DNA of 64,000 nucleotides from Selaginella moellendorffii. Taxonomy: Eukaryota; Plantae; Lycopodiophyta. The stretch lies in NCBI RefSeq assembly GCF_000143415.4, contig NW_003314300.1:387581-451580 (forward strand), written 5' to 3'. The number at the start of each line of letters is the position of its first letter. Within the stretch, counting starts at the first letter, position 1. A program made the position numbers and the translations under genes. Under the pieces are notes generated by a model. That model was not told where the DNA came from. It worked only from the letters and a program-made list of their open reading frames with translations, and did not search any database. This document shows positions 13,201 through 47,867 of this stretch, piece by piece.

Positions 13201-13460
13201 AAGAGCATACAAAAATACTTGTACGATATTGGAATGGAGCCACGATTCCAAAGAATAATCTCGTGAACTTAATTACAAAGAATAATCTCGTGTTCTTGAA
13301 AGAACCAAGTTTCCAGGAAGTAAAGTTTACTCTCTTTTAGTGGAAAGTTACGTTATAATCCATCAACGTAACAGCCACGGCAGCGTGAGAGCGTCCGTCC
13401 ACGACGTGAATCGTGGAATATCGAAGAGTTATTTTCAGCATTCGAGGCAGAGAGACGACT

Positions 13461-14951
13461 ATGGTGAAGAAGCGATGGGTCGGGAACTCGGTGGTGATCC
13501 TTCTCCTGGCACTCTTCTTCTTCCGAGAGATCATCGTGGACACTTTCTTCCCTCTTGGCACCTGGACGAGGACGAGTTCTTCCACAGACCCTTCACTCCT
13601 GATCCAAAGGTCTGCTGCTCTTCCCGTAGCTCCAGTCCCGCTGAGACAAGCCTTCGCAGGAAGAACTCTCAACGTCTCCGACCGTGTTCTAGAGCTAGCT
13701 CCTCCGGGGATTAGAACAGAGTTCGAGGAGAACAGGAACGTCGACGGCTATGGACTCACAGTCGTCAGAAACGCTTGCTTTCTTCCTGGAGGAGAGATCG
13801 TGTTAGTAAACATCACAGACGAGTACCTCAACCAGACGCTCTCGGCATCGCCCAAGCTCCAGGAACTCTGGAGCGCCGGTTACAATTCCACTTGCGGGTG
13901 GTGCCAGAAGACCGGTTCGCAGCTCTCGCCGGAGGCTCCAGAGGGCGCTCGGTGGATCCCCGGGAACACCACCCACATCCTTCCATACTTGGGGAACGTC
14001 TTCCACAACTTTGCCGAGCGGATCTGGCCACACCTGGCGTCGCACCACCCCCCGCTCAACCAGACAGCCATGCAGCCGATCAATCACTTCCTGATCCACA
14101 AGTTCACCACCTGGATCGAGCAGGCCGACGCCGGAAACCACGAGCGCGAGAACTTCATGCTCCAGTTCCGGGTACTGGCCGAGCTCTCCCCCGGCTCGGA
14201 CTTCGTCGTCATGGACTCGGCCGGCCAGAACCACCCCGTTTGCTTCGAGCGGATCACACTGTCTTGCTCCTCCTGCGACCGGATGTCCACCACCCTCGGC
14301 CACCAAGTCTTCTCGGCCTCCATCACCTCGTACCGCGAGGCCGCCTTTAAGTTCTTCGGCGTCCCGGAGCCAGCGGTCTCGGCTCCACCCCGGCCACTAA
14401 GAGTAGCGTTCTACGGCCGCAGTGACACGAGAAGACGTCGAGTAGCAAACGCTGGCGAGGTGATGGAACACCTCCGAGCTTGGGACAGTCCACCGCTTGA
14501 TATCCTCTTCCTGGACGAGCTTCTTTCGGACAAGCGTTACAACCAGACCATGCCGGAGGCGGTGGCGCTCTTCTCACACACCGATGTGCTCGTCACTGTT
14601 CATGGAGCGAATACTTGGGCGACTATGTTCATGCCACGCCGTGCTGCTGTGATCGAGATATACGGCCCCTGCGGCCCCGGGACTTGGATCGACAACGTCG
14701 CGAGAGCTCTCGATCTTAAGCACGACACGACGTCGAATCCATGGCGAGACAAGGTGGCCTCTCCTCTGGCTGGAAACACCACCCAGTGTGAGGGAGCTAT
14801 ACAAACTCCAGACTTCACCTTGGATACGATCAAGCTGGACGAGGCCATCGCAAAGTTGGCGCTGCCTACGGGGCCCTTGGATCGGATTCCACTGCACTGG
14901 TTATACGACTGGAAGAAACGAGCGTACGCTACTCACTTGGTGGAGGGGTGA
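13461..14951 (+). CDS. Glycosyltransferase family 61 protein (type II membrane, intronless)
   Basis: N-terminal TM anchor, NVFHNF, RRRVAN, and DVLVTVHGANTWATMFMPRRAAVIEI (GT61/DUF563 signature). Confidence 0.8.
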   Translation: MVKKRWVGNSVVILLLALFFFREIIVDTFFPLGTWTRTSSSTDPSLLIQRSAALPVAPVPLRQAFAGRTLNVSDRVLELAPPGIRTEFEENRNVDGYGLTVVRNACFLPGGEIVLVNITDEYLNQTLSASPKLQELWSAGYNSTCGWCQKTGSQLSPEAPEGARWIPGNTTHILPYLGNVFHNFAERIWPHLASHHPPLNQTAMQPINHFLIHKFTTWIEQADAGNHERENFMLQFRVLAELSPGSDFVVMDSAGQNHPVCFERITLSCSSCDRMSTTLGHQVFSASITSYREAAFKFFGVPEPAVSAPPRPLRVAFYGRSDTRRRRVANAGEVMEHLRAWDSPPLDILFLDELLSDKRYNQTMPEAVALFSHTDVLVTVHGANTWATMFMPRRAAVIEIYGPCGPGTWIDNVARALDLKHDTTSNPWRDKVASPLAGNTTQCEGAIQTPDFTLDTIKLDEAIAKLALPTGPLDRIPLHWLYDWKKRAYATHLVEG

Positions 14952-31032: not shown

Positions 31033-33633
31033 TTATTGTGCTGTGATGTCTCTGGCCTTTGCCGGCTCCATCAACTTTTGCGCATCCTCAACCCTGCCAA
31101 GCTTGATCAAGCTCTCGGAAAGGATCCTAAACGTCTCCGGGTTTGGCACCGCGCCGCTCTTCCTCGTCGCCTCAAACACCGCATAAGCCTGGTCGATGTT
31201 TCCCGTCTTGCAAAGCCCTCCAACGAAGCTCACGCAGCTCACGGGATCCAGCAAGAACTTCTTCTCCCTCATCTGCTTGTAAACCTCCAGAGCTTCGTCC
31301 AGCTTCGTCGCTCGAGACAGTCCCGCGATGAGGATGCGATACGTGCAAGAATCAGCCGCGAGACCTTTGGTTCCCATCTCCGCGACGAGCTCGTTCGCTC
31401 GGCCCAGCTTCCCCAGCTTGCAAAACCCATCGATGAGCGTGTTGAAAGTCACAATCGTTGGCTGCAAGCCTGCGCCGCCGGACATCTCCCTGTAGAGCTT
31501 TTCGGCCTCGTCCATGCTGCCCCTCTTGCAGTAGCCGGCGATGAGCGAGTTGTAGGCCACCGCGTCCGGGGGAATGCACGCTTGAGTCATCTTCTCGAAG
31601 AGCTCCCTGGCTTGGATCACCTTCTCGGCCCGGCAAAGCCCCGAGATGAGAGTCGTGTAAGTGTACTTGTTTGGCTTGCATCCGGCCTCGAGCATGCTGC
31701 CGAAGACTTCCAAGGCCTTCTCCAGTTCCCCCGTGCGGCACAGCCCGTGGATGAGCGTGCTGAAAGTGATCACGTTTGGGACGTAGCCAGCAGCTCGCAT
31801 CGCCTCGAAGAGCTTGCAGCCTTCTTCCACCCTTCTGGCTTTGCATACCGCGTCGAGCAGCGTGTTGTAAGTCACCACGTCCGGAGAACACGAGTGGCTC
31901 TTCATCTCGGCGAACAAGGTGTTGGCTTGCTCAAGCTGGCCGGAGGAGCACAGGCCGTGGAGCAAAACGTTGTAAACGGGGACGTTTGGTTGGCAGCCGT
32001 GCTTGGGCATCTGCTTGAAGCGTTCCGAGGCATCTTTCACCTTCCCCGCTTGGCAGAGGCCGAGTATGAGCTCGTAGAACATAAGTCTGTCCGGGTGGTG
32101 GCCGCCTCGAATCATCTCGTCGAACAGGCTGCTCGCGTGGTCGACTCTCCGCGCCTTGGCTAGCGCTCGAACGAGGCTCGAGTACGCCTGCATGGACGGC
32201 GTCTGTCCTCTCATCACCATCTCGGACAGGATCTTCAAGGACTCGTCAAGCTTGCCAATCTTCGCGAGGCCGTGGATGAGAATGTGGTACGAGACGTTGT
32301 CCGGCTTGTATCCGCTTTCCACCATATGTTGGTATACTTCTCTCGCCTTCTCCATGTTGTTGGACCTCGCAAAGCCTTGCATGACGCCGTTGAAGGCAAA
32401 CACATCGGGGTTACACCCGGCTGCCATCATCTCTTCCAAAACTTTGTAGCTCTCCTCGGGCTTTGCCTCCTTCACCAGGCTCTTGATGATGGAGCTGTAA
32501 GTAAAGACGTTGGCCGCGATGTTCTTGTCTCTCATCTCGGACAAAAGCTTCCTGGCACCTTCGGTGTTCCCCGAGCTGCAAAGCCCGGATATGAGAGTGT
32601 TGTAAGTCCATCTATCCGGCTCCACTCTCTTCTCGCGTTTCATACTCTGGAACAGATCGAGAGCCTTTCCAAACTCACCAGCGTTGCAGCGGCTGTTGAT
32701 GAGGACGTTGTAAGTTACGAGTGACGGTACGCAAGACTCGCTCTTCATCTTCTCGAAGACTTCCAGTGCCTGTGCCAGCATCCCCGCTTTAGCCAAGCTT
32801 TGCACGACGAAGTCATAAGCGTCACCACCTATAGCACACTTGGCCTTGCTCATTCTTTTCAAGATCTCGTAGACGCGAACTCCCTTTCCGGCTTTCCCAA
32901 ACGCTGCAACGACGGCCGACCAAGTCTTGGACTCCACGGCCACCTTTTGCGATCCCAGGCAGTCTAGCACGCTCTCGATCTCTGCGAGACGCTCCTCCGG
33001 CTTCGCTGCGAGGAGCTGGATCAAACTCTCCAGCGTCGTCGAGGATCGAGGAGCAAAGTTGGATGCTACCATCGTCTTGAACGCGTCGAAGGCCTTGTCC
33101 GTGGAGTTCGTCGCGACGAGAATCTCGAGAAGAACGTTGTGGACATCCTTCTCAGCCATGAAACCATTCTCTGCCGCGATCATGGCCTCGCAAGCCGGTA
33201 TCAAAAGCTTGGATCGACCATCTCTCACCAAGCTGTGAAGAACGAGCTTGAAAGTTTCCTCGTCCACGTCCAAGAAGCCCGGGCCGCGCTGCTGGATCTG
33301 CTGGACGAGCTGGTTCACGACTCTCTTCTGGGCATCGAGGGAGACGCTGGAATGAGAGTAACCGCGCTGGCCTTCCACCCAGCTCAAGAACTTGAGCGCT
33401 ACTCGGCGATCTTTGATGGATTTCACGACCTCCACGGCATGCTGGGGCTCTACAAGGCCAGCATTTAGACCCTCGAGCCTCTTCGCCGTGTCGGGCGTCC
33501 ATCCCCCACTGAGAACGCGGCCGATCGTCTCAACCACGTCGATCTTCTTGGAAATCTTGGCCCTTGTGCTCGCCAATCGCGACTGGAAATTCCTGGAGCT
33601 GCTACTTACCTGATTGTAGCACGAGCGTAACAT
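31033..33633 (-). CDS. P-class pentatricopeptide repeat protein (866 aa)
   Basis: Intronless, with about 17 canonical 35-aa repeats (PDVVTYNTLI.GLC..G..E.A..LF.EM) and an organelle-transit-like N-terminus. Confidence 0.95.
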   Translation of the reverse strand: MLRSCYNQVSSSSRNFQSRLASTRAKISKKIDVVETIGRVLSGGWTPDTAKRLEGLNAGLVEPQHAVEVVKSIKDRRVALKFLSWVEGQRGYSHSSVSLDAQKRVVNQLVQQIQQRGPGFLDVDEETFKLVLHSLVRDGRSKLLIPACEAMIAAENGFMAEKDVHNVLLEILVATNSTDKAFDAFKTMVASNFAPRSSTTLESLIQLLAAKPEERLAEIESVLDCLGSQKVAVESKTWSAVVAAFGKAGKGVRVYEILKRMSKAKCAIGGDAYDFVVQSLAKAGMLAQALEVFEKMKSESCVPSLVTYNVLINSRCNAGEFGKALDLFQSMKREKRVEPDRWTYNTLISGLCSSGNTEGARKLLSEMRDKNIAANVFTYSSIIKSLVKEAKPEESYKVLEEMMAAGCNPDVFAFNGVMQGFARSNNMEKAREVYQHMVESGYKPDNVSYHILIHGLAKIGKLDESLKILSEMVMRGQTPSMQAYSSLVRALAKARRVDHASSLFDEMIRGGHHPDRLMFYELILGLCQAGKVKDASERFKQMPKHGCQPNVPVYNVLLHGLCSSGQLEQANTLFAEMKSHSCSPDVVTYNTLLDAVCKARRVEEGCKLFEAMRAAGYVPNVITFSTLIHGLCRTGELEKALEVFGSMLEAGCKPNKYTYTTLISGLCRAEKVIQARELFEKMTQACIPPDAVAYNSLIAGYCKRGSMDEAEKLYREMSGGAGLQPTIVTFNTLIDGFCKLGKLGRANELVAEMGTKGLAADSCTYRILIAGLSRATKLDEALEVYKQMREKKFLLDPVSCVSFVGGLCKTGNIDQAYAVFEATRKSGAVPNPETFRILSESLIKLGRVEDAQKLMEPAKARDITAQ

Positions 33634-33730
33634 CGCTCGCCATCGTCATCGCGGCCTCATCTCTCTACCCTAGCAAAATTCGTAGGGTTCTTCGCGACCA
33701 TGAGCTGGGCACTTCTTCAAGAAATCTGTG

Positions 33731-35899
33731 ATGCCTGTCCAAATTCCATCCAAGAGAGCGCCTTCACACGATGATCTAGCTCGTCTTCTCCAATCGTGCA
33801 CGGATCTTGAGCGCGCGAAGCGTATCCACAGCCGGATTCACGACTCGACCGCGCACGGGAGTGGCATCATTCTCGCAAATCTCTGCGTTGCGATGTACGC
33901 GCGATGTGGCAGCATTGCCGATGCTAGAGCTACATTCGATTCTATCAAGAACCCTAATGTTTTCTCCTGGAACATCATCCTTGCAGCATATACCCGGGCA
34001 GGGCATCTGGATCAAGCCCAGCGTTTGTTCCATGCCATGCCCTTTTGGCAGCGTGACGTGGTAACATGGACGACCATGATTGCTGCGTACGCTCAGAACC
34101 AACGGCTCGATGAGGCCCAAGCTCTCTTTCTCTCCACTCCCGAGCACAATGCTGTCTCCTGGAATGCTATGATCCAAGCATATGCTGCTTGCGGATATCT
34201 TTCCAAAGCAAAAGCTTGCTTTAATACCATGCCGGCTACCGATATTGTTTCCTGGAATATACTTTTATCTGCTTACGCCGAAAGCATGTTACTCGAGGAC
34301 GTAACTTTACTTTTTAACTCAATGCCTCAATGGGATCTTGTGTCCTGGAATACGTTCCTTGCAGCAAATGCCCATTCTGGGCATCTGTATTATGCAAAGC
34401 GCATATTCGATGAGATGCCCGAGCATGGCTCTTGCTCGCGCAGCGTCATGATCTACGCCTACGTTCACGCTGGATCCGTAGAGGACGCCACGAAAAACGT
34501 ACCTCTCGGGGAAGACGATGTGGCATCTGGCAACGCGATTATCAGTGGGTGGTCACAGGCGGGAGATGTCCAACGAGCAAAGCTGGCGTTCGATTCCATG
34601 GGCCGCCGGGACCTAGTGACGTGGAATGCCCTCCTCGCCACGTACGCACACAATGGGATGTTAGTAGCAGCGGCTGCTACGCTGGACAAGATGCCCGAGA
34701 GTGACGCGGTGACGTGGATCACCATGATCTCTGCCTACTCACACCACGGCCACGTAGAGGAAGCCGAGAGGGTGTTTGCATCAGCGCCTGGCGGTAACAT
34801 GATGACGTGGAATGCCATGCTGTCGGCGTATGCCCACAACGGGCGTGCCGCGTCAGCGGAGTCCTTGTTCCGTACGATGCCACGTCGGGACAGGGTGTCG
34901 TGCAATACAATGATCGCTACGTTTTCACAGGCGGGAAAGCTGGGAAAATCCGAGGAGGTGTTCTTTGAGCTCTTATCGGATGAGGAGAAAGGAATAACTT
35001 CTTGGAACGCGATGATCGAGGCGTATGCCCGAAATGGTCATCTTGGAGACGCTCGAAAGCTCTTGGAGCTCATGCCCGAGTGGAACGCGGTAACCTGGAC
35101 GACAATGCTTGGGGTTTTTGCCGATGCTGGCCTTGTAGAAGACGCAAAGTCCTTGTTTGATCTAGCACCAGAGAAGGATTGCGTGTGCTGCAATGCTATG
35201 ATCCAAGCGTTTGTAGTAACTGGGCTCTTGGAAGAAGCGGAAGCAATGGTTTCGAGTCTTCCTTATGCCACTATATATGTTTGGTCAACGATGGTGGGAG
35301 CTTATGCAAACAGTGTAAAACTCCAGGAGGCCGAGGCTATGTTCTTTGCTATGCCAGAACGGAATGTTACGTGCTGGAACGTTTTGATAACAGCATATGC
35401 CACAAATGGGCAATTAGAAACATCGAGAAAAGTCTTTGATCGCATGCCAGAGAGAGACGTAGTTTCATGGTCGACGTTAGTCTCCTCATTTGCTCACGGA
35501 GGCCATCACTGCGAAGATTCCATGGGTATCTTCCGGGACATGGAATTGGAGGGCGATTGCGCTCCAGATGCCATATTCTTCTTGAGCATATTGAATGCTT
35601 TTAGGCAGCAGGGATTAGTGGATCAAGCATCACATTTTTTCACGTTGATGAGTGTCGAGCATGGGATTTTGCCATGGCAAGAACACTACAATGCGATGGT
35701 GGACACTTTGGGACGAGCAGGGAGAATAGCAGCAGCAGAAGAGCTCATAAACAACATGCCATTTGAGTCCCAAGTGGCTGTGTGGGGATCGCTCCTCACA
35801 TCTTGCAAGCGTTTTAGTGACAGATCCAAGAGGGCATCTTTGGCTTCCAAGAATATACTTGAAATGGATCCCACAAATTGTGCCCCGTACCTTTTATAG
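33731..35899 (+). CDS. PLS-class PPR protein with long run of 31-aa SS motifs and E domain
   Basis: Repeated D.VSWN.M..AYA..G....A...F..MP units and C-terminal EHYNAMVDTLGRAG...MPF...WGSLLTSC. No DYW domain. Confidence 0.92.
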   Translation: MPVQIPSKRAPSHDDLARLLQSCTDLERAKRIHSRIHDSTAHGSGIILANLCVAMYARCGSIADARATFDSIKNPNVFSWNIILAAYTRAGHLDQAQRLFHAMPFWQRDVVTWTTMIAAYAQNQRLDEAQALFLSTPEHNAVSWNAMIQAYAACGYLSKAKACFNTMPATDIVSWNILLSAYAESMLLEDVTLLFNSMPQWDLVSWNTFLAANAHSGHLYYAKRIFDEMPEHGSCSRSVMIYAYVHAGSVEDATKNVPLGEDDVASGNAIISGWSQAGDVQRAKLAFDSMGRRDLVTWNALLATYAHNGMLVAAAATLDKMPESDAVTWITMISAYSHHGHVEEAERVFASAPGGNMMTWNAMLSAYAHNGRAASAESLFRTMPRRDRVSCNTMIATFSQAGKLGKSEEVFFELLSDEEKGITSWNAMIEAYARNGHLGDARKLLELMPEWNAVTWTTMLGVFADAGLVEDAKSLFDLAPEKDCVCCNAMIQAFVVTGLLEEAEAMVSSLPYATIYVWSTMVGAYANSVKLQEAEAMFFAMPERNVTCWNVLITAYATNGQLETSRKVFDRMPERDVVSWSTLVSSFAHGGHHCEDSMGIFRDMELEGDCAPDAIFFLSILNAFRQQGLVDQASHFFTLMSVEHGILPWQEHYNAMVDTLGRAGRIAAAEELINNMPFESQVAVWGSLLTSCKRFSDRSKRASLASKNILEMDPTNCAPYLL

Positions 35900-41204: not shown

Positions 41205-44200
41205 ATGAGGGCGATCGTTGTGGCGGGGACATGCAGCGGGGCGGGCAAGAGCAGCATCGCGCTCGGCCTCATGGCGGCCTACACGCGCCGCGGCCTTCGC
41301 GTCCATCCATTCAAGATTGGCCCCGGTGAGTGATAAATGCTCTTGAGCTCTAAGATTCCTACCTCCTCCGCGCTCTAGATTTCTCGGATCCAATGCATCA
41401 CAAGGCCGCGACGGGGCATGATTCTTACAATCTGGATAGCTGGATGATGAGCAGGCGAGTGAAAATCTCAAGAACTCTGCGCGAATTTTGATATTCTTGT
41501 TTGGCCTTTGTATTCTCCAGAGAGGCGAACCAAGCGTGCTTCATTCGATGCGCTCCAGCTACTGACGTTGCAATCGTGGAAGGAGTCTTTGGAATGTTTG
41601 ATGGCCGCGATGGGAAATCCGAGGCCGGAAGCACTGCCGAAATGGCCAAGATTTTGGGAGCTCCGGTCCTTCTCGTGCTTGATACCAGAGGATTCGCTCG
41701 AAGTGCCGCAGCTTTGATTCGAGGATACACCGCTTTCGATCCAGAAGTCACCTTTGCTGGAATTATCTTCAACAAGGTTTGCTACTAAGTTTTCTCGTTC
41801 CTAGTTTATCTTTTTTCTTGTTTTCTTCTTCTATGTAGCTGGAGAGCTCCGCTCACAAGGCTTGGCTTATGGAAGCTGTGTCTGCCATCGATTCGAGCGT
41901 TAAAGTTCTCGGTGGCATTCCTATCGTAGACGGCTTGCATTTGGCTGAGAATCAGTTCTACCCGAGCCTGAGTGGTGAAGAAGCAGTACCGGCGAGCTAC
42001 ATTCAAGTTTTTGCCGATTTGATTGAGCATCACGTCGACTTGGATGGTCTGTTAGAGGCTGCCGGTGTGTGGAAGCCAAAGGGTGGCACGAACTTTTACT
42101 TGGAAAACTTCCGTTCAGCGCCACCTTATGCCAAAGTCCGCATCGGAGTCGCGAGGGATGCTGCCTTTTGCCTCTATTACCAGGAGAATCTCTCGTTGCT
42201 TCAAGGTAATTACTTCGTGTTTTCGTGTTTGTCTCTCTTAAGTTGCGGATTTCTTGTCCTTCTGACAGACGCCGGAGCAGAAATAGTTTTCTTTTCACCT
42301 TTGAAGGACTCCCTCCCGACGAGACTGGATGCTATTATCTTTGGAGGCGGCTATTTGGAGCATCACTTGGAGAAGCTATCTCTGAACAAGAAACTCCTCT
42401 ACGCGGTGCGAGCATTCGCTGATGCCGGAGGAATTATCTATGGAGAAGCTGGAGGCGCTATGTACTTGTCACAAGGCATCGAGGTATGGTGTCCAAATTT
42501 TAGTTCTTGCGTGGTGCTGAATGACGTTGTCCCTTGCAGACAGACAAGCACCAGCCGTTCACTATGTGCGGCGTTTTTCCTTTTTGGACACGAATGAAAT
42601 TAAGAGCGACAACAAAAGAATATGTCAAGGTTTGTTTGGTTTTCATTATTTGCTTCTTCGTTCGACATTATCAAGAATAAACAGGCAACAACACAAGAAA
42701 GTTGCGTATTGTTTCCTCCTCATATTGGCGAAATTCGCGGATACATGTTAAACTGTAGCGAGGTCTTTTGGCTGCAGGCAGATGGTATAAACATCTGTCC
42801 GAGAGGGTACGCCAGTTTATTTATTTGTTTATTGTCATTTTGATTTTGTGAATTGCGACAGGTTCGTGTTGAAGTATGAAACCTCAGAAAAGATGGAAGA
42901 AGTAGAAGGCTACATGCAAGGAAATGCAATGGCTACGTTTGCGCGGCTTCATTTCGGCAGCAACCCGGCTATAGTTCACACTCTCATAGACCGCTGCAGG
43001 TTTGCTCATTCGCCTTCGCTCCTAACTTCTGACTTATGGCTGAAAAATCTTCCAGAATGGATTCGTCCAAAGCTGCTGCCGTTGCCGCTGCTTCTGCTTC
43101 TGCAGTAGCGCATGCCGGCCCAGCAGCAGCAGCGGCCGCTGGCTCCGCTGCAGCAAGAGCTGTGACAGCGGCCCTCGGAGAATCGAGGGAGATGTCCCCT
43201 TCCCGTATGGAACGCACAAAGTTTCACGGCAAGCTATCTAGTGGTGACTGGAGTGAGCGCGGAAGAGATCCGTTTAGGAGACATACAAGGTCTCTCAGTA
43301 CAAGTCCTGTTTACACACGCCTTACTATCGACGAGGAGTGTCCCGACATCGAAGTTGACATCAAAGAGACGACTGAGGATGGCTCTTCTGCCAGGATTGC
43401 AAGGTCTAAATCCGAGGTTTGGGATGCTCGCGGACAGGATGCTTTGTCCCCACAAGATCTTACAGAGGTTGTCACGTCGATGGATGATCAGTTCATAAGT
43501 GAGGAGGGTCGAGCAGCTGGGCGACAGTGTTTAGTGACGACGACAAGAAGAATGGACCCGAATCAAGGCATTTATGTGCCTTTCACCGTGAAAGTGATAC
43601 CACACAAGATCGTGTCGCTCTTTCCAGTGGCTACAGAGATCCTTCTTAAGCTTGGTAAAGTTTCCTTGTTTTTCTAGTAAAGTTGTAATAGTGACACACG
43701 CTTTTAGTTTCTGGCAGGGGCTGGACACCGTTTGCTTGGGGTGACCGATGCGTGTGATAAGCCGGCTGGAGTCAGAATGGGACGACATATTGTAAGTGTC
43801 GTGTTTTGCGCTTGAAAGGTTATTTTACTATGTTCATGAAAACGTATATTGCAGGTGTGTCGCAACCAGCAGCGATCCAGCATTGGGAAGGAGAATGAGT
43901 TGTCGTACAAACTCGATCTCCCATGGCTTTCGAAGACCAAGCCTCATTTGATTATCACTCAGGTTAGAAAAGTTCTTTTGAGAATGTCATAACGTGAGGC
44001 TTTTGTTCATGCAGAAAGTGTGCTCTCTGTGCTACATGGATAGCAAAGACGTGACTGAAGAGATTACCAGAGCAGGCCTCCAAGATACGAGGCTGTTCGT
44101 TGTAAATCCACACACGGTACGAGGAAATCTAGCTCTCCATAAATCGGTGCTGATTTTCACTCCTTAGTTATCTGATATCTGGGCATTCATCATGGATCTT

Positions 44201-44813
44201 GCGGACATGCTGGGTTTGTACAAGGAAGCCTGCCAACTTATAAACTCCCTCCGACTCCGCTTGAGAAGAATCGCTGCTAGTGTCGCTGTCCATCACCAGC
44301 CGAGACTGCTTCTCCTTCAAGGCCTCGATCCGCTTACTCTCGGGGGCCGATGGATTGCGGAGATGGAAATCCTGTCCGGTGCCTACGACGGCTTGCAAAA
44401 ACCAGGCTGTGCGTCTGAGAGGCTACACTGGCAACGTATCACATCCTACGCTCCCGAGTTTATTATTCTGGCTCCTTGTTCCACATCCGTCGAGCAGACA
44501 TTGTCCGAGGTACTTGTTTACGATTCCCCATATCTTTGTCTGCTGATTTTCGTGCTTCCAGGTGCACAAGCTTGCCAGACAGCCGGGGTTTTGGTCCGTG
44601 CCGGCGGTGGAGTGTCGACAAGTCTACATTTGCGACGGATCATACTTCAGCCAACCCGGTTTGAGGGTGGTGGAGGGAATGGAGCTTCTGGCTCACATCC
44701 TCCACCCATCTACAGTCTCGGCTCCATCTGCCAGTGGAGTGCTGAAGCTTTCGCTCAAGCCGGGGCAAAAATGCCGTCCAGAGGAGCTCTACAGGCACTT
44801 TCTAGTCGAGTGA
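41205..44813 (+). CDS. Fusion: cobyrinate a,c-diamide synthase (CbiA/CobB)-like + linker + BtuF/TroA-type cobalamin/Fe-chelate binding domain, 14 exons, ~953 aa
   Basis: Exons 41205-41325, 41379-41454, 41521-41776, 41839-42205, 42269-42483, 42540-42629, 42685-42806, 42862-42999, 43056-43654, 43718-43791, 43855-43962, 44015-44116, 44168-44509 and 44562-44813 sum to 2862 nt, open throughout. CbiA motifs: AGTCSGAGKS, FKIGPDFSDP, NLDSWM, VEGVFGMFDG, STAEMAK.LGAPV.LV.D, ARSAAA..GY..FD, IGVARDAAFC.YYQEN, FSPL.D, GGGY.E, EGY..GN..A..LHF. Binding-domain motifs: KIVSLFPVATEIL..LG, P.LIITQ.VC.LC, P..IILAPC, PAV...VY..DG.YFSQPG.R.VEG.E.LA.ILHP. Confidence 0.88.
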
Positions 44814-46007
44814 AATGGTGGTGTATCAGGTACTTTGCTTGTTTCTTTCCTTTACTTTCCTTCTCTTTCCCGGCTGCTCGAAGCCACTGAGTGCTCACGG
44901 ACTTTGCGGCGTGGTTTCTCGCAGGATCGTGATCAGACATTCGCTCCCAGGGGCCCAACCAAAGATTAGTGGGTTATGATCAAGAAAAAGACCCAACCAA
45001 TGTGCGCATCATGACTGCTGCGTGCTAAAAAGAAAGAGAAGAAGAACGAACACTCCCTTGGTTGGAGATTTGGAGAATTCAATGCATCTTAAAGGTAAGC
45101 AGCAGTCGCTGTTCAAGCTAGAGTTCGATTGACTATTGAATTCTCTTTTTTGCTTAAATTTTTCTAGAAGCCCATGATGGTATCAATCGACCTCAAACCG
45201 ACCCATTACAGAAAGTGGAGGAGATAGCAAAGCATGACGCAAAACGCGGGTGCCATGCGAGCCGTCCGATCTAGGGCTTGGAACTTTGACAAAAGGTGGC
45301 AAATAAGGATCTTTCTTTAGTCCACTGGCGTGATATTTCCAAACTTCCATGTGACTTGCCCATGTTCGCGTGCCGAGATTGTCAAAAAATGGGCTCGAAA
45401 GTTTCCAAGAACCGAAAGGGAACAAAACAAACGAGCGAGCAACAAATTTAACGAACGAATCAAGCAGGAGTGTGGACGGACGTCGTGAGAGCAAGAGCAG
45501 GGAAAAAAAAAAGAAAAAAAGAAAGCACTTTGAAACAATGGAAAGAAAAAATAGACAACCATGTTGTCAAACATTTGTATTCCAAGGTTGCATTTTTTGG
45601 GGGGCCCCGCCTGGCAAATTTAGCGATCACGTAGGATGACGTTGGCCGGGGTGGCGGGGTGGGATATAATATAATCTCTCCAACTTTTAGGGTTCTTGCG
45701 TGGCTCACATTTTCAAGAACCTTTTCTCGCTTGGCTTTTTTTCCGCTGTTTGTTGGAGGGTGGTGCCACTGCTGTGATCGATCCTCCGCCTTTTTTCTTT
45801 CTCACAGTAGTGATGTTGAGAGTTTTCCAAAAAGTCAAACTGGTGGGGAGGATGCTAGACTGCGACGAATCCATAGAGATGAAGATCGAAGAATGCAGGG
45901 ACAAGAGATTGGCGGTGGTGGGATTAGCTTAGCCGATCCATCGATCGATTACCAAACGAGGAAAGATTCATAGAGAGGATTTGAATTGGAGGCAAGAAAA
46001 GAAAGAC

Positions 46008-47867
46008 ATGAGTCGATCGAATAGGAGGGTCTACCCACCGGGAAAGCTTCCACTCCAACACCCTCTGTTCGTGGAAGAGGACCCCCCAAACGACGAGAAA
46101 TCAAGGTGGGCGACTGCGCCTCCCAACAGCGGCGGATTTGAGAGCCCTGTGATCGCCGTCCCTTTCAAATGGGAGCTCGAGCCAGGTGTTCCCAAACAAA
46201 AGCTCGATCGCCAAGAACACCAGCAGCGCTGGAGGAGAGACGAGGAGGAGCTGTTGGCGAAGAAGAGCCCACCACCACCAACTGCTGACCGGGCGACGGT
46301 GGTCGAAAAGGATCTCCAACAGAGTGATCATCCTGGGAAAGCCTCCCCGTCGCCATCGCCATCGCCATCTTCCTCCTCCTCCTCCTCCTCCTCCTCTCTT
46401 GCTCCACCCCCGCGATTGATGGTGATAAGCAGCAGCACTGGTAGAAAAGCTGGGCCGGCGCTCAGCTCTCCTCGCTCTCCCAGATCCATTTCCCTGTCCC
46501 GCAAGATGAAAAGCTTGCTCCAGGGGAAGCTGGCATCGCCCAGGAAGATCTTCTCGGAGCAGCAGCAGCAGCAGCGCTCGAGCCTGTGGGAGTGTGAATC
46601 CGGAAAGGTAGTCCAAGAGTTGGATCGTCGCGTCGAGGAAGAACTGGTGGACCGCCGGTGCTGCGTTTCGAGGTGTTGCTCCAGCAACGATATAGTCTTC
46701 GAGGGAGAGCTTCTCGATCTTCATCATCAGCCGAAGCATCCACCACCACCAGCGCCGGCGGGATCGATGCCTTTCAAGAACATGTCCAGCATGCTCCTCG
46801 AGCTCTGGTATGGCGGTGGAGGATCCAGCTCCGAGTTCCCGAGAAGTCCTATCCCTGGCTTTTTCCGTGACGAGTTTCCACTCCAGAGCTCCGGTGGCTC
46901 TAGCACTGCGAGTAGTAGCGAGTTTCCAATCCAGAGCTCTGGTTCTAGCACTGCGAGTAGTAGCAAGAGCATTGCCTCGCCCGTGACAAGCTCGTCCTCT
47001 TCTCCCAGCGACCTGGAGAGCCCCGGTAGCAGCACGGACAACTCGCTCGGCAGCTTCTCCAGCAGTGACTCCTCCTCCCACCACGACCACCACCATCAAA
47101 TCTTGCACGTCCCCCGCCACGACCACGAGTTCCAGACGAGCTTTGATTCCTGCGACGAAGTCAAGCTCTTCGGTTACGCCTCGGACGACGACGAGTACGG
47201 CGGTGGCTTCGACTTCGCTGCCGCCGCCAGCCGCGAGTTCTTCGCCAAAAACTTCTACTACCACTCGGACAGGTTCCGCGTCGAGTCGTGCGACTCTCCC
47301 TCGCTGCTCGGCGTCAAGCAGCTCGCTCGCTCGGCAGTGCCAGTGCCACCGCTCCCCAGCGCTCTCAAGTCGGGGAAGAACTCCAAGAAGTGCTTGAAGA
47401 AGGTGAGGTTCGCCTGTGTCGAGGAAGAAGTCGAGCCGGAGAAGGCCGAAGATGGTCCGGAAGTTGACGAGGAAGAGGATGATGAACTCGTGGTTGCTTC
47501 GCCATCGCCGACGAGTCCTGCTCTGTCCCGTTTCTCGTCGAGGCCAGCGTCGCGGTTCTGTAGCATCGAGGAGGACGACGATGGCGGCTTCTACCGGGAC
47601 TCAGACGAGCTCTCCTCCGAGCCGTGCAGTCCTTCACCTCGTTGTGCCAGACGAGATCCATCTCAACTCTTGCTGCGGATCATCCAAGCCGATGCCGAGT
47701 CCAGCCGGAAGAACAAAGGCGCTCTTAAGGTACGATCTTCTCCATACTCAACGAATTTTCTTTTGTTTCTTTCGTCTGGTTTCTTCGGTTCGTTCTCTAA
47801 GTTGAAAGCTGACGGCTCGTTTTTTGTTTGTGCGCAGTCTATGTTTGGTTCACGTTCGCGCTGGTAA
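46008..47867 (+). CDS. Ser/Pro-rich intrinsically disordered plant protein with VPFKWELEPGVPK (DUF688-type) motif
   Basis: Long open frame, low complexity, the conserved VPFxWExxPGxPK motif and KKVRF. Probable last intron 47730-47837. Confidence 0.7.
   Translation: MSRSNRRVYPPGKLPLQHPLFVEEDPPNDEKSRWATAPPNSGGFESPVIAVPFKWELEPGVPKQKLDRQEHQQRWRRDEEELLAKKSPPPPTADRATVVEKDLQQSDHPGKASPSPSPSPSSSSSSSSSSLAPPPRLMVISSSTGRKAGPALSSPRSPRSISLSRKMKSLLQGKLASPRKIFSEQQQQQRSSLWECESGKVVQELDRRVEEELVDRRCCVSRCCSSNDIVFEGELLDLHHQPKHPPPPAPAGSMPFKNMSSMLLELWYGGGGSSSEFPRSPIPGFFRDEFPLQSSGGSSTASSSEFPIQSSGSSTASSSKSIASPVTSSSSSPSDLESPGSSTDNSLGSFSSSDSSSHHDHHHQILHVPRHDHEFQTSFDSCDEVKLFGYASDDDEYGGGFDFAAAASREFFAKNFYYHSDRFRVESCDSPSLLGVKQLARSAVPVPPLPSALKSGKNSKKCLKKVRFACVEEEVEPEKAEDGPEVDEEEDDELVVASPSPTSPALSRFSSRPASRFCSIEEDDDGGFYRDSDELSSEPCSPSPRCARRDPSQLLLRIIQADAESSRKNKGALKVRSSPYSTNFLLFLSSGFFGSFSKLKADGSFFVCAQSMFGSRSRW

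What the first reader, a model, noticed from the sequence alone, without database searches (positions are those of the whole stretch)
41205..44813. Land-plant CbiA/CobB-BtuF fusion: candidate cytosolic corrinoid/tetrapyrrole-handling system
Seen: hand-splicing 14 exons gives one uninterrupted ~953-aa frame. Intron 43000-43055 (phase 2, AG|A) joins the CbiA C-terminus (LHFGSNP...DRCR) in frame to an Ala-rich/disordered ~190-aa linker and then a complete class III periplasmic-binding domain. The ORF track shows only disconnected pieces. Established: in prokaryotes CbiA/CobB amidates cobyrinate during B12 synthesis, its paralog CfbB amidates Ni-sirohydrochlorin, and BtuF-type proteins bind cobalamin for import as separate exported proteins. 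Land plants are not known to synthesise or require B12. Inference: 13 introns argue for a long-resident nuclear gene of prokaryotic ancestry rather than contamination. The Met leads straight into beta-strand 1 (MRAIVVAG), with no transit or signal peptide, so both modules would be cytosolic. It may salvage, remodel or sense microbial corrinoids, or act on an endogenous metallo-tetrapyrrole.
Basis: partly seen in the sequence, partly recalled or inferred. Interest (0 to 1): 0.92.

Follow-up and report, generated by a model that had tools for sequence, protein, structure and literature searches.

The report
Plant CobB enzyme fused to binding domain
A spikemoss nuclear gene joins a bacterial-type vitamin-B12-pathway amidating enzyme to a four-cysteine "binding-protein" domain; the same uncharacterised fusion runs from green algae to ferns, hinting at corrinoid handling in plants thought to ignore B12.

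Summary
Fourteen exons (41205-44813, +) splice into one 953-aa frame. It equals RefSeq XP_024539831.1 ("uncharacterized protein LOC9659294", Selaginella moellendorffii) at all but one residue.

The N-half scores as a CobB/CbiA cobyrinate a,c-diamide synthase (382 bits, cutoff 254). The C-half is a confident class III binding-protein fold.

- **Not land-plant specific.** The fusion occurs in lycophytes, mosses, a liverwort and green algae; fern and Chara records are partial or split. An Ostreococcus-like alga has it as one uninterrupted ORF. A haptophyte has it too. No seed-plant hit appeared.
- **Not BtuF proper.** The C-domain belongs to a leaderless prokaryotic family with four near-invariant cysteines (156 of 160 members). 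Selaginella keeps all four.
- **Corrinoid link, recurrent but minor.** Some members sit in cobalamin-riboswitch operons with cobB, cobQ and TonB receptors, yet only 1 of 73 reference-genome loci has a riboswitch.
- **Dead glutaminase.** Selaginella has Ala334 for the nucleophile Cys and Arg444 for its partner His. Mosses and most algae keep the Cys.

Best reading: an ancient cytosolic corrinoid salvage or repair protein, partly degenerate here. Function is untested, and I found no paper on it. The scan also noted the allelic copy elsewhere in this genome.

The parts
41205..44813 (+). Whole coding region: 14 exons, 953 codons plus stop (LOC9659294 isoform X1)
   Evidence: Hand-built model identical to P0335 / XP_024539831.1 except residue 67
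41205..42135 (+). CobB/CbiA synthetase (ATP-binding, dethiobiotin-synthetase-like) domain, aa 1-250, exons 1-4. P-loop GTCSGAGKS (aa 8-16), GPDFSDP (aa 39-45) and IVEGVFGMFDG (aa 84-94) are intact
   Evidence: Pfam CbiA and AAA_26. NCBIfam CobB equivalog 382.5 bits against cutoff 254 for aa 1-462. Motif alignment with bacterial enzymes
42136..43056 (+). GATase_3 (CobB/CobQ-type glutamine amidotransferase) domain, aa 251-462, exons 4-8 and the first base of exon 9
   Evidence: Pfam GATase_3 76.5 bits over aa 252-450. 62% identical to Diphasiastrum in this domain
42448..42450 (+). Codon 334 = Ala at the position of the glutaminase nucleophile Cys (GEAGGAMYL against bacterial ECGGLMYL)
   Evidence: Alignment. 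Both Selaginella alleles carry it, since residue 334 is not among their 13 differences
42944..42946 (+). Codon 444 = Arg at the first His of the conserved YVHLHFGSNP motif. That His is the one I take, from memory of HAMAP and GatD, to activate the Cys
   Evidence: Alignment. The role of this His is recalled, not tested
43000..43055 (+). Intron 8 (56 nt, phase 2, GT..AG), which joins the enzyme half to the linker
   Evidence: The same junction appears in RefSeq isoforms X1, X2 and X3
43057..43590 (+). Linker, aa 463-640: Ala-rich predicted helix 466-501, then about 135 disordered residues
   Evidence: Full-length AlphaFold2 model, pLDDT 25-31 over 505-640. Length and sequence are not conserved among orthologues
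43591..44810 (+). Leaderless class III binding-protein-like domain (Peripla_BP_2), aa 641-953, exons 9-14, with a conserved C-terminal tail ...LKLSLKPGQKCRPEEL..
   Evidence: Pfam 30.1 bits against cutoff 27.5. AlphaFold2 pLDDT 91.6, pTM 0.89. Foldseek finds 4m7o, ShuT, PhuT and BtuF at E 1e-17 to 1e-12. Tree places it among the leaderless prokaryotic members
43753..43755 (+). Cys674, first of the four family-defining cysteines (in GVTDACDKP)
   Evidence: It aligns just before the D-Y-P loop of exported binding proteins
44021..44032 (+). Cys725 and Cys728 (ITQKVCSLC), the CxxC of the family. Exported relatives have a gap here
44477..44479 (+). Cys860 (ILAPCS), the fourth conserved cysteine, in the C-lobe
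44168..44224 (+). First 19 codons of exon 13 (LSDIWAFIMDLADMLGLYK). RefSeq isoform X2 skips them, and isoform X3 is truncated just upstream, after exon 12. Homologues align from the start of this exon

Best explanation
This is an intact Selaginella nuclear gene under selective constraint. It encodes a cytosolic two-module protein that has been inherited vertically in the green lineage since before streptophytes and chlorophytes split.

Module 1 is a bona fide CobB/CbiA-type ATP-dependent a,c-diamide synthetase. Module 2 is a member of a leaderless (cytoplasmic) prokaryotic family of class III 'periplasmic-binding-protein-like' proteins. That family is defined by four cysteines lining the inter-lobe cleft.

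The most likely ancestral job is salvage or repair of exogenous corrinoids. Module 2 would hold a corrinoid, or a metal or Fe-S centre acting on one. Module 1 would activate the a and c acetate carboxylates with ATP and amidate them, using ammonia supplied by the glutaminase domain.

In Selaginella the glutaminase nucleophile and its partner His are gone. The protein could therefore amidate only with free ammonia, or it now acts as a binding or chaperone protein. The synthetase motifs and all four cysteines are kept.

Shown: gene structure, domain identities, phylogenetic distribution, loss of the nucleophile, the four-Cys signature, and the B12-operon context of some prokaryotic relatives. 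Inferred: the ligand, the reaction, the cellular location, and whether any enzymatic activity remains.
For: Gene and fusion. All nine long relatives tested have the same three domains. A Mamiellales-like 640-kb contig, flanked by Tic110, PP2C and Mod_r genes, carries the fusion as one uninterrupted ORF.

Enzyme half: CobB equivalog 382.5 bits against cutoff 254. It is 42-49% identical to bacterial cobyrinate a,c-diamide synthases, and the ATP and substrate motifs are intact.

Vertical descent: in both the CobB and binding-domain trees the eukaryotes fall on one side of a branch (97-100 SH-aLRT), with the order Chara, Closterium, then bryophytes and lycophytes.

Constraint: haplotype dN/dS is 0.30 overall, 0.18 in the synthetase and 0.10 in the binding domain. 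Identity to Diphasiastrum is 52-62% across the domains.

Leaderless family: prokaryotic relatives start at beta-1. At least 588 species-level matches were found. The four-Cys pattern CCCC occurs in 156 of 160 members and in Selaginella.

Corrinoid link. cobB lies 13 nt upstream, co-directional, in a Bathyarchaeia clade, beside genes for an ECF S-component, DUF4430 and an alpha-toroid protein. L161 reads cobalamin riboswitch, TonB receptor, cobB, DUF6580, binding protein. L141 reads riboswitch, binding protein, cobQ, riboswitch, TonB receptor, exported BtuF, cobB. Riboswitch operons also occur in L011, L142, L145, L149 and L156. These B12-context members fall in at least six clades of the family tree.

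Fold: nearest solved structures are the tetrapyrrole-binding subgroup ShuT, PhuT, RhuT and BtuF.

Precedent: the only known algal B12-uptake protein, CBA1, is also BtuF-like in fold (PMC10828217).
Against: The B12 context is a minority feature. Only 1 of 73 reference-genome loci of the family has a cobalamin riboswitch within 6 kb. Only 1 of 80 has an adjacent cobB. Most members have no conserved neighbours and no permease.

The cobBs that sit next to the binding-protein gene form their own clade and are not sister to the eukaryotic enzyme.

Mosses, lycophytes and ferns have no known B12-dependent enzyme. Dorrell et al. 2024 found such proteins only in hornworts and liverworts.

These eukaryotes are not known to have the rest of the corrin pathway. 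Amidation at a and c would therefore help only with corrinoids that lack just those amides, and no such nutrient is known to me.

Four cysteines in the cleft are not how BtuF or the heme binders hold their ligand. They could instead bind a metal ion.

The nucleophile Cys is lost in Selaginella, Diphasiastrum, Riccia, Tetraselmis and Hariotina. The cysteine site is eroded in several land plants.

AlphaFold2 gives no confident arrangement of the two halves (pTM 0.57).
Confidence: 0.45

Rival explanations
1. In land plants the protein is a pseudo-enzyme or relic. After B12-dependent metabolism was lost, the ancestral corrinoid function decayed and the protein was kept for a non-catalytic role (binding, scaffolding or sensing). 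That role is unknown.
For: The nucleophile Cys is lost in both lycophytes (Ala, Ser) and in Riccia (Gly); in Selaginella the partner His is lost too. The four-Cys site is eroded in Diphasiastrum, Riccia and Pteridium, and partly in mosses. No seed-plant protein appears among the best 120 of 5047 CobB-domain hits or in the binding-domain searches. Between the two Selaginella haplotypes, GATase and linker show dN/dS near 1 on very few changes (Fisher p = 0.04 against the other domains). Dorrell et al. 2024 describe stepwise loss of B12 proteins in land plants.
Against: Over deep time the GATase domain is as conserved as the synthetase: 62% against 55% identity between Selaginella and Diphasiastrum. 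Synthetase motifs and all four cysteines are intact in Selaginella. Mosses and Chara keep the nucleophile. The haplotype counts are tiny, one synonymous and four non-synonymous changes per region.
Confidence: 0.25
2. The substrate is an endogenous acetate-bearing tetrapyrrole such as sirohydrochlorin, siroheme or a precursor, or another metallo-tetrapyrrole. The protein would then be an eukaryotic counterpart of CfbB-type chemistry, not a corrinoid enzyme.
For: The CobB family includes CfbB, which amidates Ni-sirohydrochlorin; the N-half scores 333 bits on that model. The nearest solved folds of the C-domain include heme binders (ShuT, PhuT, RhuT, BhuT) as much as BtuF. The gene persists in plants without known B12 enzymes.
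Against: The CfbB score is far below its cutoff of 560, while the CobB equivalog cutoff is passed. In plants siroheme is made in plastids (textbook knowledge), whereas this protein and most orthologues have no N-terminal extension; the Chloropicon extensions are acidic and coiled-coil-like. Every informative prokaryotic context points to cobalamin, through riboswitches, cobQ and BtuB-like receptors. I know of no amidated siroheme or heme reported in plants.
Confidence: 0.15
3. The C-domain is a cytosolic metal or Fe-S module (TroA-like metal receptor logic), not an organic-ligand binder. It would deliver or sense a metal such as cobalt, or carry an Fe-S cluster for redox chemistry on the product of the enzyme half.
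For: Four near-invariant cysteines sit on loops that line the cleft in this fold. A bacterial relative gives a weak hit to the NCBIfam 'helical backbone metal receptor' model. Two points rest on my own knowledge. In the aerobic B12 route the product of CobB is the substrate for cobalt insertion. In the anaerobic route the next step is a cobalt reduction.
Against: The spatial clustering of the four Cys could not be checked, because no coordinates are returned. Several eukaryotic orthologues have lost two or three of the cysteines and still keep the domain. No metal-related neighbours recur in the prokaryotic loci.
Confidence: 0.12
4. These are two adjacent genes (CobB-like and binding-protein-like) wrongly merged, or bacterial contamination of the assembly.
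For: If intron 8 is retained, the frame stops at 43106-43108, and ATGs at 43036 and 43057 could start a separate product. No transcript data could be examined here.
Against: RefSeq isoforms X1-X3 all span the junction. The fusion is conserved in more than 10 lineages, one with an intron-free single ORF. The gene has 13 spliceosomal introns, plant PPR neighbours and a second allelic locus with the same structure.
Confidence: 0.03

Closest known systems
[quoted passage not shown]
   Same: The N-half has the same two-domain build, a DTBS-like ATP-dependent synthetase followed by GATase_3. It is 42-49% identical to bacterial enzymes and passes the curated equivalog cutoff. The P-loop, GPDxxDP and EG..DG motifs are kept.
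   Different: It is eukaryotic, nuclear and intron-rich, and it occurs in organisms that do not synthesise B12 (Dorrell et al.). It is fused through a roughly 180-aa linker to a binding-protein-like domain. In Selaginella the nucleophile Cys and its partner His are replaced by Ala334 and Arg444.
CfbB, Ni-sirohydrochlorin a,c-diamide synthase of coenzyme F430 synthesis (NF033195)
   Same: Same family and the same chemistry on the a and c acetates of a tetrapyrrole. The alignment runs full length.
   Different: It scores 333 bits against a cutoff of 560. The organisms are not methanogens, and no other Cfb gene is implied.
BtuF, the periplasmic vitamin B12-binding protein of the BtuCD-F importer (PDB 1n2z, 1n4a, 5ysc)
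   Same: Same class III two-lobe fold with a long backbone helix. Foldseek gives E about 1e-12 to 1e-14 and TM about 0.6-0.8, and the profile match has E 1e-14 to 1e-28.
   Different: There is no signal peptide and no partner permease. A CxxC insertion sits where exported relatives have a gap, next to the position that I recall as BtuF Trp66. The BtuF equivalog model is not matched by the Selaginella domain. Heme binders match equally well.
Leaderless four-cysteine Peripla_BP_2 proteins of bacteria and archaea (about 300 aa, motif TQ[EG]LC[D]VCA; uncharacterised as far as I could find)
   Same: The eukaryotic domain is nested in this family in the tree. It shares the absence of a leader and, in Selaginella, all four cysteines. 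Some members are encoded with cobB or cobQ under cobalamin riboswitches.
   Different: The prokaryotic members are stand-alone proteins, and the fusion to CobB was seen only in eukaryotes. Most prokaryotic members show no B12 context.
CBA1, the cobalamin acquisition protein of Chlamydomonas and Phaeodactylum (PMC10828217)
   Same: It is an algal protein with a predicted BtuF-like fold and a proven role in B12 uptake.
   Different: CBA1 has a signal peptide and is ER-associated, and it has no enzyme domain. Its reported distribution differs: candidates occur in hornworts and vascular plants but not in mosses or liverworts. No sequence comparison could be made here.

Membership tests
[quoted passage not shown] | Whole-domain score above the curated equivalog cutoff (NF002204, 254 bits) | tested here: met
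   382.5 bits for aa 1-462. TIGR00379 gives 350 bits against a cutoff of 261
[quoted passage not shown] | ATP-dependent synthetase domain with P-loop, GPD(Y/F)xDP and (I/V)EG..(F/Y)DG motifs | tested here: met
   GTCSGAGKS, GPDFSDP and IVEGVFGMFDG align with the bacterial enzymes
[quoted passage not shown] | GATase_3 domain with the nucleophile Cys (ECGG) and its activating His | tested here: not met
   Selaginella has Ala334 and Arg444. The Cys is present in Physcomitrium, Ceratodon, Chara, Closterium, Trebouxia, Chloropicon, the Ostreococcus-like alga and Diacronema. The role of the His is recalled, not tested
[quoted passage not shown] | Amidates (hydrogeno)cobyrinic acid as part of a B12 synthesis pathway | not testable with these tools
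The rest of this genome could not be searched. The literature says only a subset of bacteria make B12, and vascular plants and mosses lack the B12-associated proteins surveyed
CfbB Ni-sirohydrochlorin a,c-diamide synthase | Score above the curated cutoff (NF033195, 560 bits) | tested here: not met
   333.2 bits
Peripla_BP_2 / class III (TroA-like) binding-protein fold | Pfam PF01497 above the gathering score | tested here: met
   30.1 bits against 27.5 over aa 647-897 of isoform X1. Orthologues score 31-54 bits
Peripla_BP_2 / class III (TroA-like) binding-protein fold | Two alpha/beta lobes joined by one long helix | tested here: met
   AlphaFold2 pLDDT 91.6 and pTM 0.89, with helices 133-147 and 150-171 of the domain between the lobes. 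182 PDB matches at E <= 0.001; the 50 best listed are all binding proteins of this fold
BtuF (vitamin B12 ABC transporter substrate-binding protein) | Exported (signal peptide) and partnered with BtuCD-type permease genes | tested here: not met
   The domain is internal to a leaderless protein. Prokaryotic relatives start at beta-1 and have no recurrent permease neighbour
BtuF (vitamin B12 ABC transporter substrate-binding protein) | Score above the BtuF equivalog cutoff (NF002894, 234 bits) | tested here: not met
   No hit for the Selaginella or Riccia domain. Bacterial relatives score 30-42 bits
BtuF (vitamin B12 ABC transporter substrate-binding protein) | Binds cobalamin in the inter-lobe cleft | not testable with these tools
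   Only indirect evidence exists, namely the B12-operon context of some relatives. The cleft loops differ because of the CxxC insertion
Leaderless four-Cys Peripla_BP_2 family (uncharacterised) | No signal peptide, and four conserved cysteines (CD.P, TQ.xCxxC, PC) | tested here: met
   Selaginella has C674, C725, C728 and C860. The CCCC pattern occurs in 156 of 160 prokaryotic members
Leaderless four-Cys Peripla_BP_2 family (uncharacterised) | Groups with the leaderless members and apart from exported BtuF-like copies in a tree | tested here: met
   Exported copies form the outgroup (100 SH-aLRT). The eukaryotic clade lies inside a starred set of 101 rows that is otherwise made up of leaderless prokaryotic members (quick tree, no root inferred)
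CBA1 (algal cobalamin acquisition protein) | Sequence homology to CrCBA1 or PtCBA1, plus a signal peptide | not tested
   No CBA1 sequence was available by reference. The reported distribution differs

The most novel reading that the evidence does not exclude
Green algae and non-seed land plants (mosses, liverworts, lycophytes, ferns) carry a dedicated cytosolic corrinoid salvage or repair enzyme. A four-cysteine binding domain captures microbial corrinoids that lack the a/c amides, and a fused CobB re-amidates them. This would mean that plants regarded as B12-free still take up and process corrinoids. It would also mean that the leaderless four-Cys binding proteins of bacteria and archaea are a new class of intracellular corrinoid carriers.
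Probability: 0.25. Interest if true: 0.9.

Novelty: new variant of a known kind. Interest (0 to 1): 0.7.

Why it matters
B12 is made only by some prokaryotes, and how eukaryotic algae process the corrinoids they take up is barely known. CBA1 is the only uptake protein characterised so far. Land plants are textbook non-users, although a 2024 survey found B12 proteins in hornworts and liverworts.

A conserved, near-bacterial CobB enzyme fused to a binding domain, present from picoalgae to ferns, gives a concrete and tractable gene for asking two questions. Do these organisms repair or salvage corrinoids? And why do plants without known B12 enzymes keep the gene?

The work also exposes an uncharacterised, widespread prokaryotic family: leaderless four-cysteine binding-protein-like proteins, found in at least 588 species. 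In several lineages the family sits in cobalamin-riboswitch operons with cobB or cobQ.

If the corrinoid reading is wrong, the gene is still a clear case of a bacterial-type enzyme whose catalytic residues erode lineage by lineage while the protein is retained.

Tried and rejected
1. Word-indexed homologue search with the binding domain alone found nothing. With the full protein it found only 7 proteins. The representative search with exon 13 was what opened the family.

A six-sequence bacterial alignment worked.

3. The recurrent neighbours in the 80 reference-genome loci (HAD hydrolase, squalene/phytoene synthase, amine oxidase, Memo, UDG) are seen mainly in the Nitrospira-group loci (L059-L064, L081). 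I take them as lineage synteny, not a functional cluster. No FecCD-type permease recurs.

4. Three single bacterial contexts (L001-L003) were uninformative.

5. The N-terminal extensions of the Chloropicon and env P0050 orthologues were checked as possible transit peptides. They are acidic, coiled-coil-like or Gly/Pro/Ala-rich, and I rejected them by eye. No predictor was available.

6. The gene downstream (45981-47864) was tested as a detached Kelch-DUF5522 module. It shows no similarity.

7. I tested whether the eukaryotic enzyme descends from a cobB next to a binding-protein gene. Those cobBs form a separate clade.

8. Per-domain dN/dS between the two haplotypes is suggestive but rests on 1-6 changes per class. 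I treat it as inconclusive for the GATase domain.

9. Sequence search of the PDB found no solved CobB, CbiA or CobQ relative, so catalytic roles rest on alignment and memory.

10. I did not build a home-made riboswitch model because the alignment was 275 columns.

11. Ten literature searches found only a passing mention of a CobB-like transcript in Chrysochromulina (PMC4057078). Nothing turned up on the fusion, DUF5522, DUF6580 or a cytoplasmic BtuF-like family.

Full report
**1. The gene**

The region holds a eukaryotic gene with very short introns. I translated all three forward frames and fixed the exon ends at GT-AG sites. This gave 14 exons between 41205 and 44813, introns of 51-64 nt, and one open frame of 953 codons.

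A search of protein representatives with exon 13 returned a 934-aa protein 97% identical to it. That protein's cluster holds XP_024539831.1, [quoted passage not shown], 953 aa. It equals my model except at residue 67, where RefSeq prefers a GC donor.

Two shorter isoforms share the junction. Isoform X2 uses a later exon-13 acceptor and lacks 19 residues. Isoform X3 is truncated after exon 12. Homologues align from the first residues of exon 13, so X1 is the conserved form.

A second locus, LOC9648553 on scaffold GL377629, has the same structure and differs at 13 residues. The window's other genes are three PPR genes, an FtsH-like AAA protease and a GT61 glycosyltransferase, plus a tRNA-Arg. 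This is ordinary plant chromosome, not contamination.

**2. The two halves**

Pfam on isoform X1 gives CbiA, AAA_26 and GATase_3, then Peripla_BP_2 at 30.1 bits (cutoff 27.5) over residues 647-897.

[quoted passage not shown] They score 333 bits on the CfbB model, far below its cutoff of 560. They are 42-49% identical to bacterial enzymes of Acidobacteria, cyanobacteria and Desulfobacterota.

The C-terminal domain, folded with 57 aligned relatives, gives pLDDT 91.6 and pTM 0.89. It matches solved class III binding proteins. The best matches are an uncharacterised Staphylococcus protein (4m7o), the heme binders ShuT, PhuT, RhuT and BhuT, and BtuF of Vibrio and E. coli. The fold is therefore certain, but the ligand class is not fixed by it.

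The full-length model has confident halves. Residues 466-501 form an Ala-rich helix and 505-640 are disordered. At pTM 0.57 there is no confident arrangement of the halves.

**3. Where else the fusion occurs**

Nine of nine long relatives tested have the same three domains in the same order. Named sources are listed below.

| Group | Organisms |
|---|---|
| Lycophytes | Selaginella, Diphasiastrum complanatum |
| Mosses | Physcomitrium patens, Ceratodon purpureus |
| Liverwort | Riccia sorocarpa |
| Fern | Pteridium aquilinum (partial transcript) |
| Charophytes | Chara braunii (two neighbouring gene models, CBR_g32415 and CBR_g32417); Closterium (enzyme half only, 484-aa model) |
| Green algae | Trebouxia (partial record, no clear binding domain), Chromochloris, Hariotina (no Peripla_BP_2 hit at E 0.001), Tetraselmis, Chloropicon, an Ostreococcus relative |
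| Haptophyte | Diacronema lutheri |

On a 640-kb Mamiellales-like contig, flanked by Tic110, PP2C and Mod_r genes, the whole fusion is one uninterrupted 3096-nt ORF. That settles the two-gene question for the family.

Some marine algae extend the protein with a Kelch propeller and a DUF5522 domain.

No seed-plant protein appeared among the best 120 of 5047 hits to the enzyme half, nor in the binding-domain searches. This points to loss in seed plants but is not proof.

Trees of each half put all eukaryotes on one side of a well-supported branch. Within them the order is Chara, then Closterium, then the land plants with the two lycophytes paired. This indicates vertical descent, not recent transfer.

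Most orthologues begin at beta-strand 1, as Selaginella does. The extensions in Chloropicon are acidic and coiled-coil-like, not transit-like. A cytosolic location is therefore the likely rule, though no predictor could be run.

**4. State of the enzyme**

The synthetase motifs are intact. The glutaminase nucleophile is not: bacteria have ECGGLMYL and Selaginella has GEAGGAMYL (Ala334). The first His of YVHLHFGSNP is Arg444. I take this His to be the residue that activates the Cys, from memory of the HAMAP annotation and of GatD. Both Selaginella alleles share these residues.

| Nucleophile position | Lineages |
|---|---|
| Cys kept | Mosses, Chara, Closterium, most algae |
| Ser | Diphasiastrum, Tetraselmis |
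| Gly | Riccia, Hariotina |
| Ala | Selaginella |

A sibling note on this window (s1-402862) reached the same view.

The domain as a whole is nonetheless conserved: 62% identity between Selaginella and Diphasiastrum against 55% for the synthetase. Between the two Selaginella haplotypes dN/dS is 0.30 overall, 0.18 in the synthetase, 0.10 in the binding domain, and about 1.1-1.3 in GATase and linker. The last two figures rest on one synonymous and four non-synonymous changes each (Fisher p = 0.04).

The gene is under constraint. Glutamine-dependent activity is not expected here. As I recall, ammonia-dependent activity is known for Salmonella CbiA, and it cannot be excluded.

**5. What the binding domain really is**

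Its closest prokaryotic relatives are about 300-aa proteins that start at beta-strand 1 (for example MKICSLLPSSTEIV...) with no signal peptide. A scan of one genome per species found at least 588 carriers across Binatia, Nitrospirota, Chloroflexota, Acidobacteriota, Planctomycetota, Desulfobacterota, Thermoplasmata, Bathyarchaeia and others.

In a tree the exported BtuF-like copies fall outside. The eukaryotic domains form one clade nested among the leaderless proteins.

Four cysteines define the family: CD.P after strand 2, a CxxC after TQ, and PC in the C-lobe. All four are present in 156 of 160 prokaryotic members. They are also present in Selaginella (C674, C725, C728, C860), Chara, Chloropicon, the Ostreococcus relative, Tetraselmis, Chromochloris and the Kelch forms. 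Mosses lack one, Pteridium lacks two, and Diphasiastrum and Riccia lack three.

Exported relatives have a gap at the CxxC and a Ser or Asp at the first Cys. The label "BtuF" therefore describes the fold, not the family. The cysteines lie on loops that line the cleft in this fold. Whether they meet in space could not be checked.

**6. Evidence for a corrinoid link**

Gene neighbourhoods of the leaderless family are mostly uninformative. Only 1 of 80 reference loci has an adjacent cobB, and only 1 of the 73 of them scanned has a cobalamin riboswitch.

The exceptions are nonetheless pointed, and they recur in separate clades:

- **Bathyarchaeia clade (13 metagenome loci plus L017).** cobB ends 13 nt before the binding-protein gene, on the same strand. 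Nearby are an asparagine-synthase-like gene, an ECF S-component, a DUF4430 protein and an alpha-toroid protein.
- **L161.** The order is cobalamin riboswitch, TonB-dependent receptor, cobB, DUF6580, binding protein.
- **L141.** The order is riboswitch, binding protein, cobQ, riboswitch, TonB receptor, an exported BtuF, cobB.
- **L156, L142 and L135.** These place cobQ near the binding-protein gene: directly after it in L156 and 1-2 kb downstream in the other two.
- **L011, L142, L145 and L149.** These have riboswitch and receptor upstream on the same strand. Seven loci pair the gene with DUF6580.

CobB and CobQ are the two corrin amidotransferases. Repeated linkage to them, together with uptake genes and not with de novo synthesis genes, suggests an intracellular partner in the salvage of incompletely amidated corrinoids. 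The eukaryotic fusion is the same pairing made permanent.

There is a caveat. The cobBs next to the binding-protein gene form their own clade and are not sister to the eukaryotic enzyme. The fusion cannot be traced to such an operon.

**7. Reading and its limits**

I favour an ancestral corrinoid salvage or repair role (confidence 0.45). Selaginella would retain a form that is constrained but dead as a glutaminase. The main arguments against are these:

- B12 context is rare in the prokaryotic family.
- Mosses, lycophytes and ferns have no known B12-dependent enzyme (Dorrell et al. 2024).
- No nutrient is known that lacks only the a/c amides.
- The cleft cysteines fit a metal or Fe-S site at least as well as a corrinoid site.

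The rivals are a non-catalytic relic in land plants, an endogenous tetrapyrrole substrate, and a metal or redox module. They are scored in their own sections.

**8. Novelty**

The gene model is public but unnamed. I found no paper on the fusion. Koid et al. 2014 mention a CobB-like transcript in a prymnesiophyte. The B12 surveys of algae and land plants do not cover it. It is a new variant of known kinds: a CobB enzyme with an unprecedented partner and host range.

Noticed in passing
P0103 and P0147 (marine algal proteins; P0339 is an MMETSP transcript): A longer architecture, CbiA-GATase_3-Peripla_BP_2-Kelch propeller-DUF5522, occurs in some marine eukaryotes. P0053 and P0082 show binding domain-Kelch-DUF5522 without the enzyme half and may be partial. 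All four cysteines are kept in P0103 and P0147.
   Followed up: partly
L017:1228-6924 and related loci L086-L124: A Bathyarchaeia locus holds an alpha-toroid (TED/prenyltransferase-like) protein, DUF4430, an ECF S-component, an asparagine-synthase-like gene with a zinc ribbon, cobB and the leaderless binding protein. The toroid plus DUF4430 pair recalls the two domains of transcobalamin (my recollection). This may be an archaeal corrinoid uptake and amidation unit.
   Followed up: partly
L161:5409-5987, L145:5322-5978, L131, L140, L146, L152, L157: A DUF6580 gene lies directly upstream of the leaderless binding-protein gene in seven loci. In L161 and L145 the pair lies downstream of a TonB receptor and a cobalamin riboswitch. 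DUF6580 is a candidate inner-membrane corrinoid transporter or partner. No literature was found.
   Followed up: partly
L017, L095, L100, L141, L161 cobB genes: The cobB genes that sit next to the leaderless binding-protein gene, from archaea and bacteria alike, form one clade (99 SH-aLRT) apart from the other sampled cobBs. They may be a salvage-type CobB subfamily that travels with its partner.
   Followed up: partly
window:44117-44224: RefSeq lists three isoforms that differ at the exon-13 acceptor: X1 is full, X2 lacks 19 residues of the backbone helix, and X3 is frameshifted and truncated at 760 aa. The original JGI models (SELMODRAFT_110102 and _121224) stop inside the enzyme half by reading into introns.
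   Followed up: partly
window:1844-4051 (-), 31036-33633 (-), 33728-35896 (+): Three large single-exon pentatricopeptide-repeat genes lie in the window. Two are back to back and divergently oriented.
   Followed up: no
window:6050-6123 (-): tRNA-Arg (anticodon TCG), 68.8 bits in Rfam.
   Followed up: no
window:45981-47864 (+): A 628-aa open frame directly downstream of the fusion gene has no Pfam match at E 1e-4. It is Ser/Pro-rich in part. The allelic locus has the same unannotated neighbour.
   Followed up: partly
window:49050-50369 (-) and 13413-14948 (+): An FtsH-like AAA protease exon (FtsH_ext plus AAA) and a GT61 glycosyltransferase-like frame.
   Followed up: no
L161:1033-1213 (-): A 6S RNA gene (60 bits) lies just upstream of the riboswitch-controlled TonB-cobB-DUF6580-binding protein operon.
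   Followed up: no
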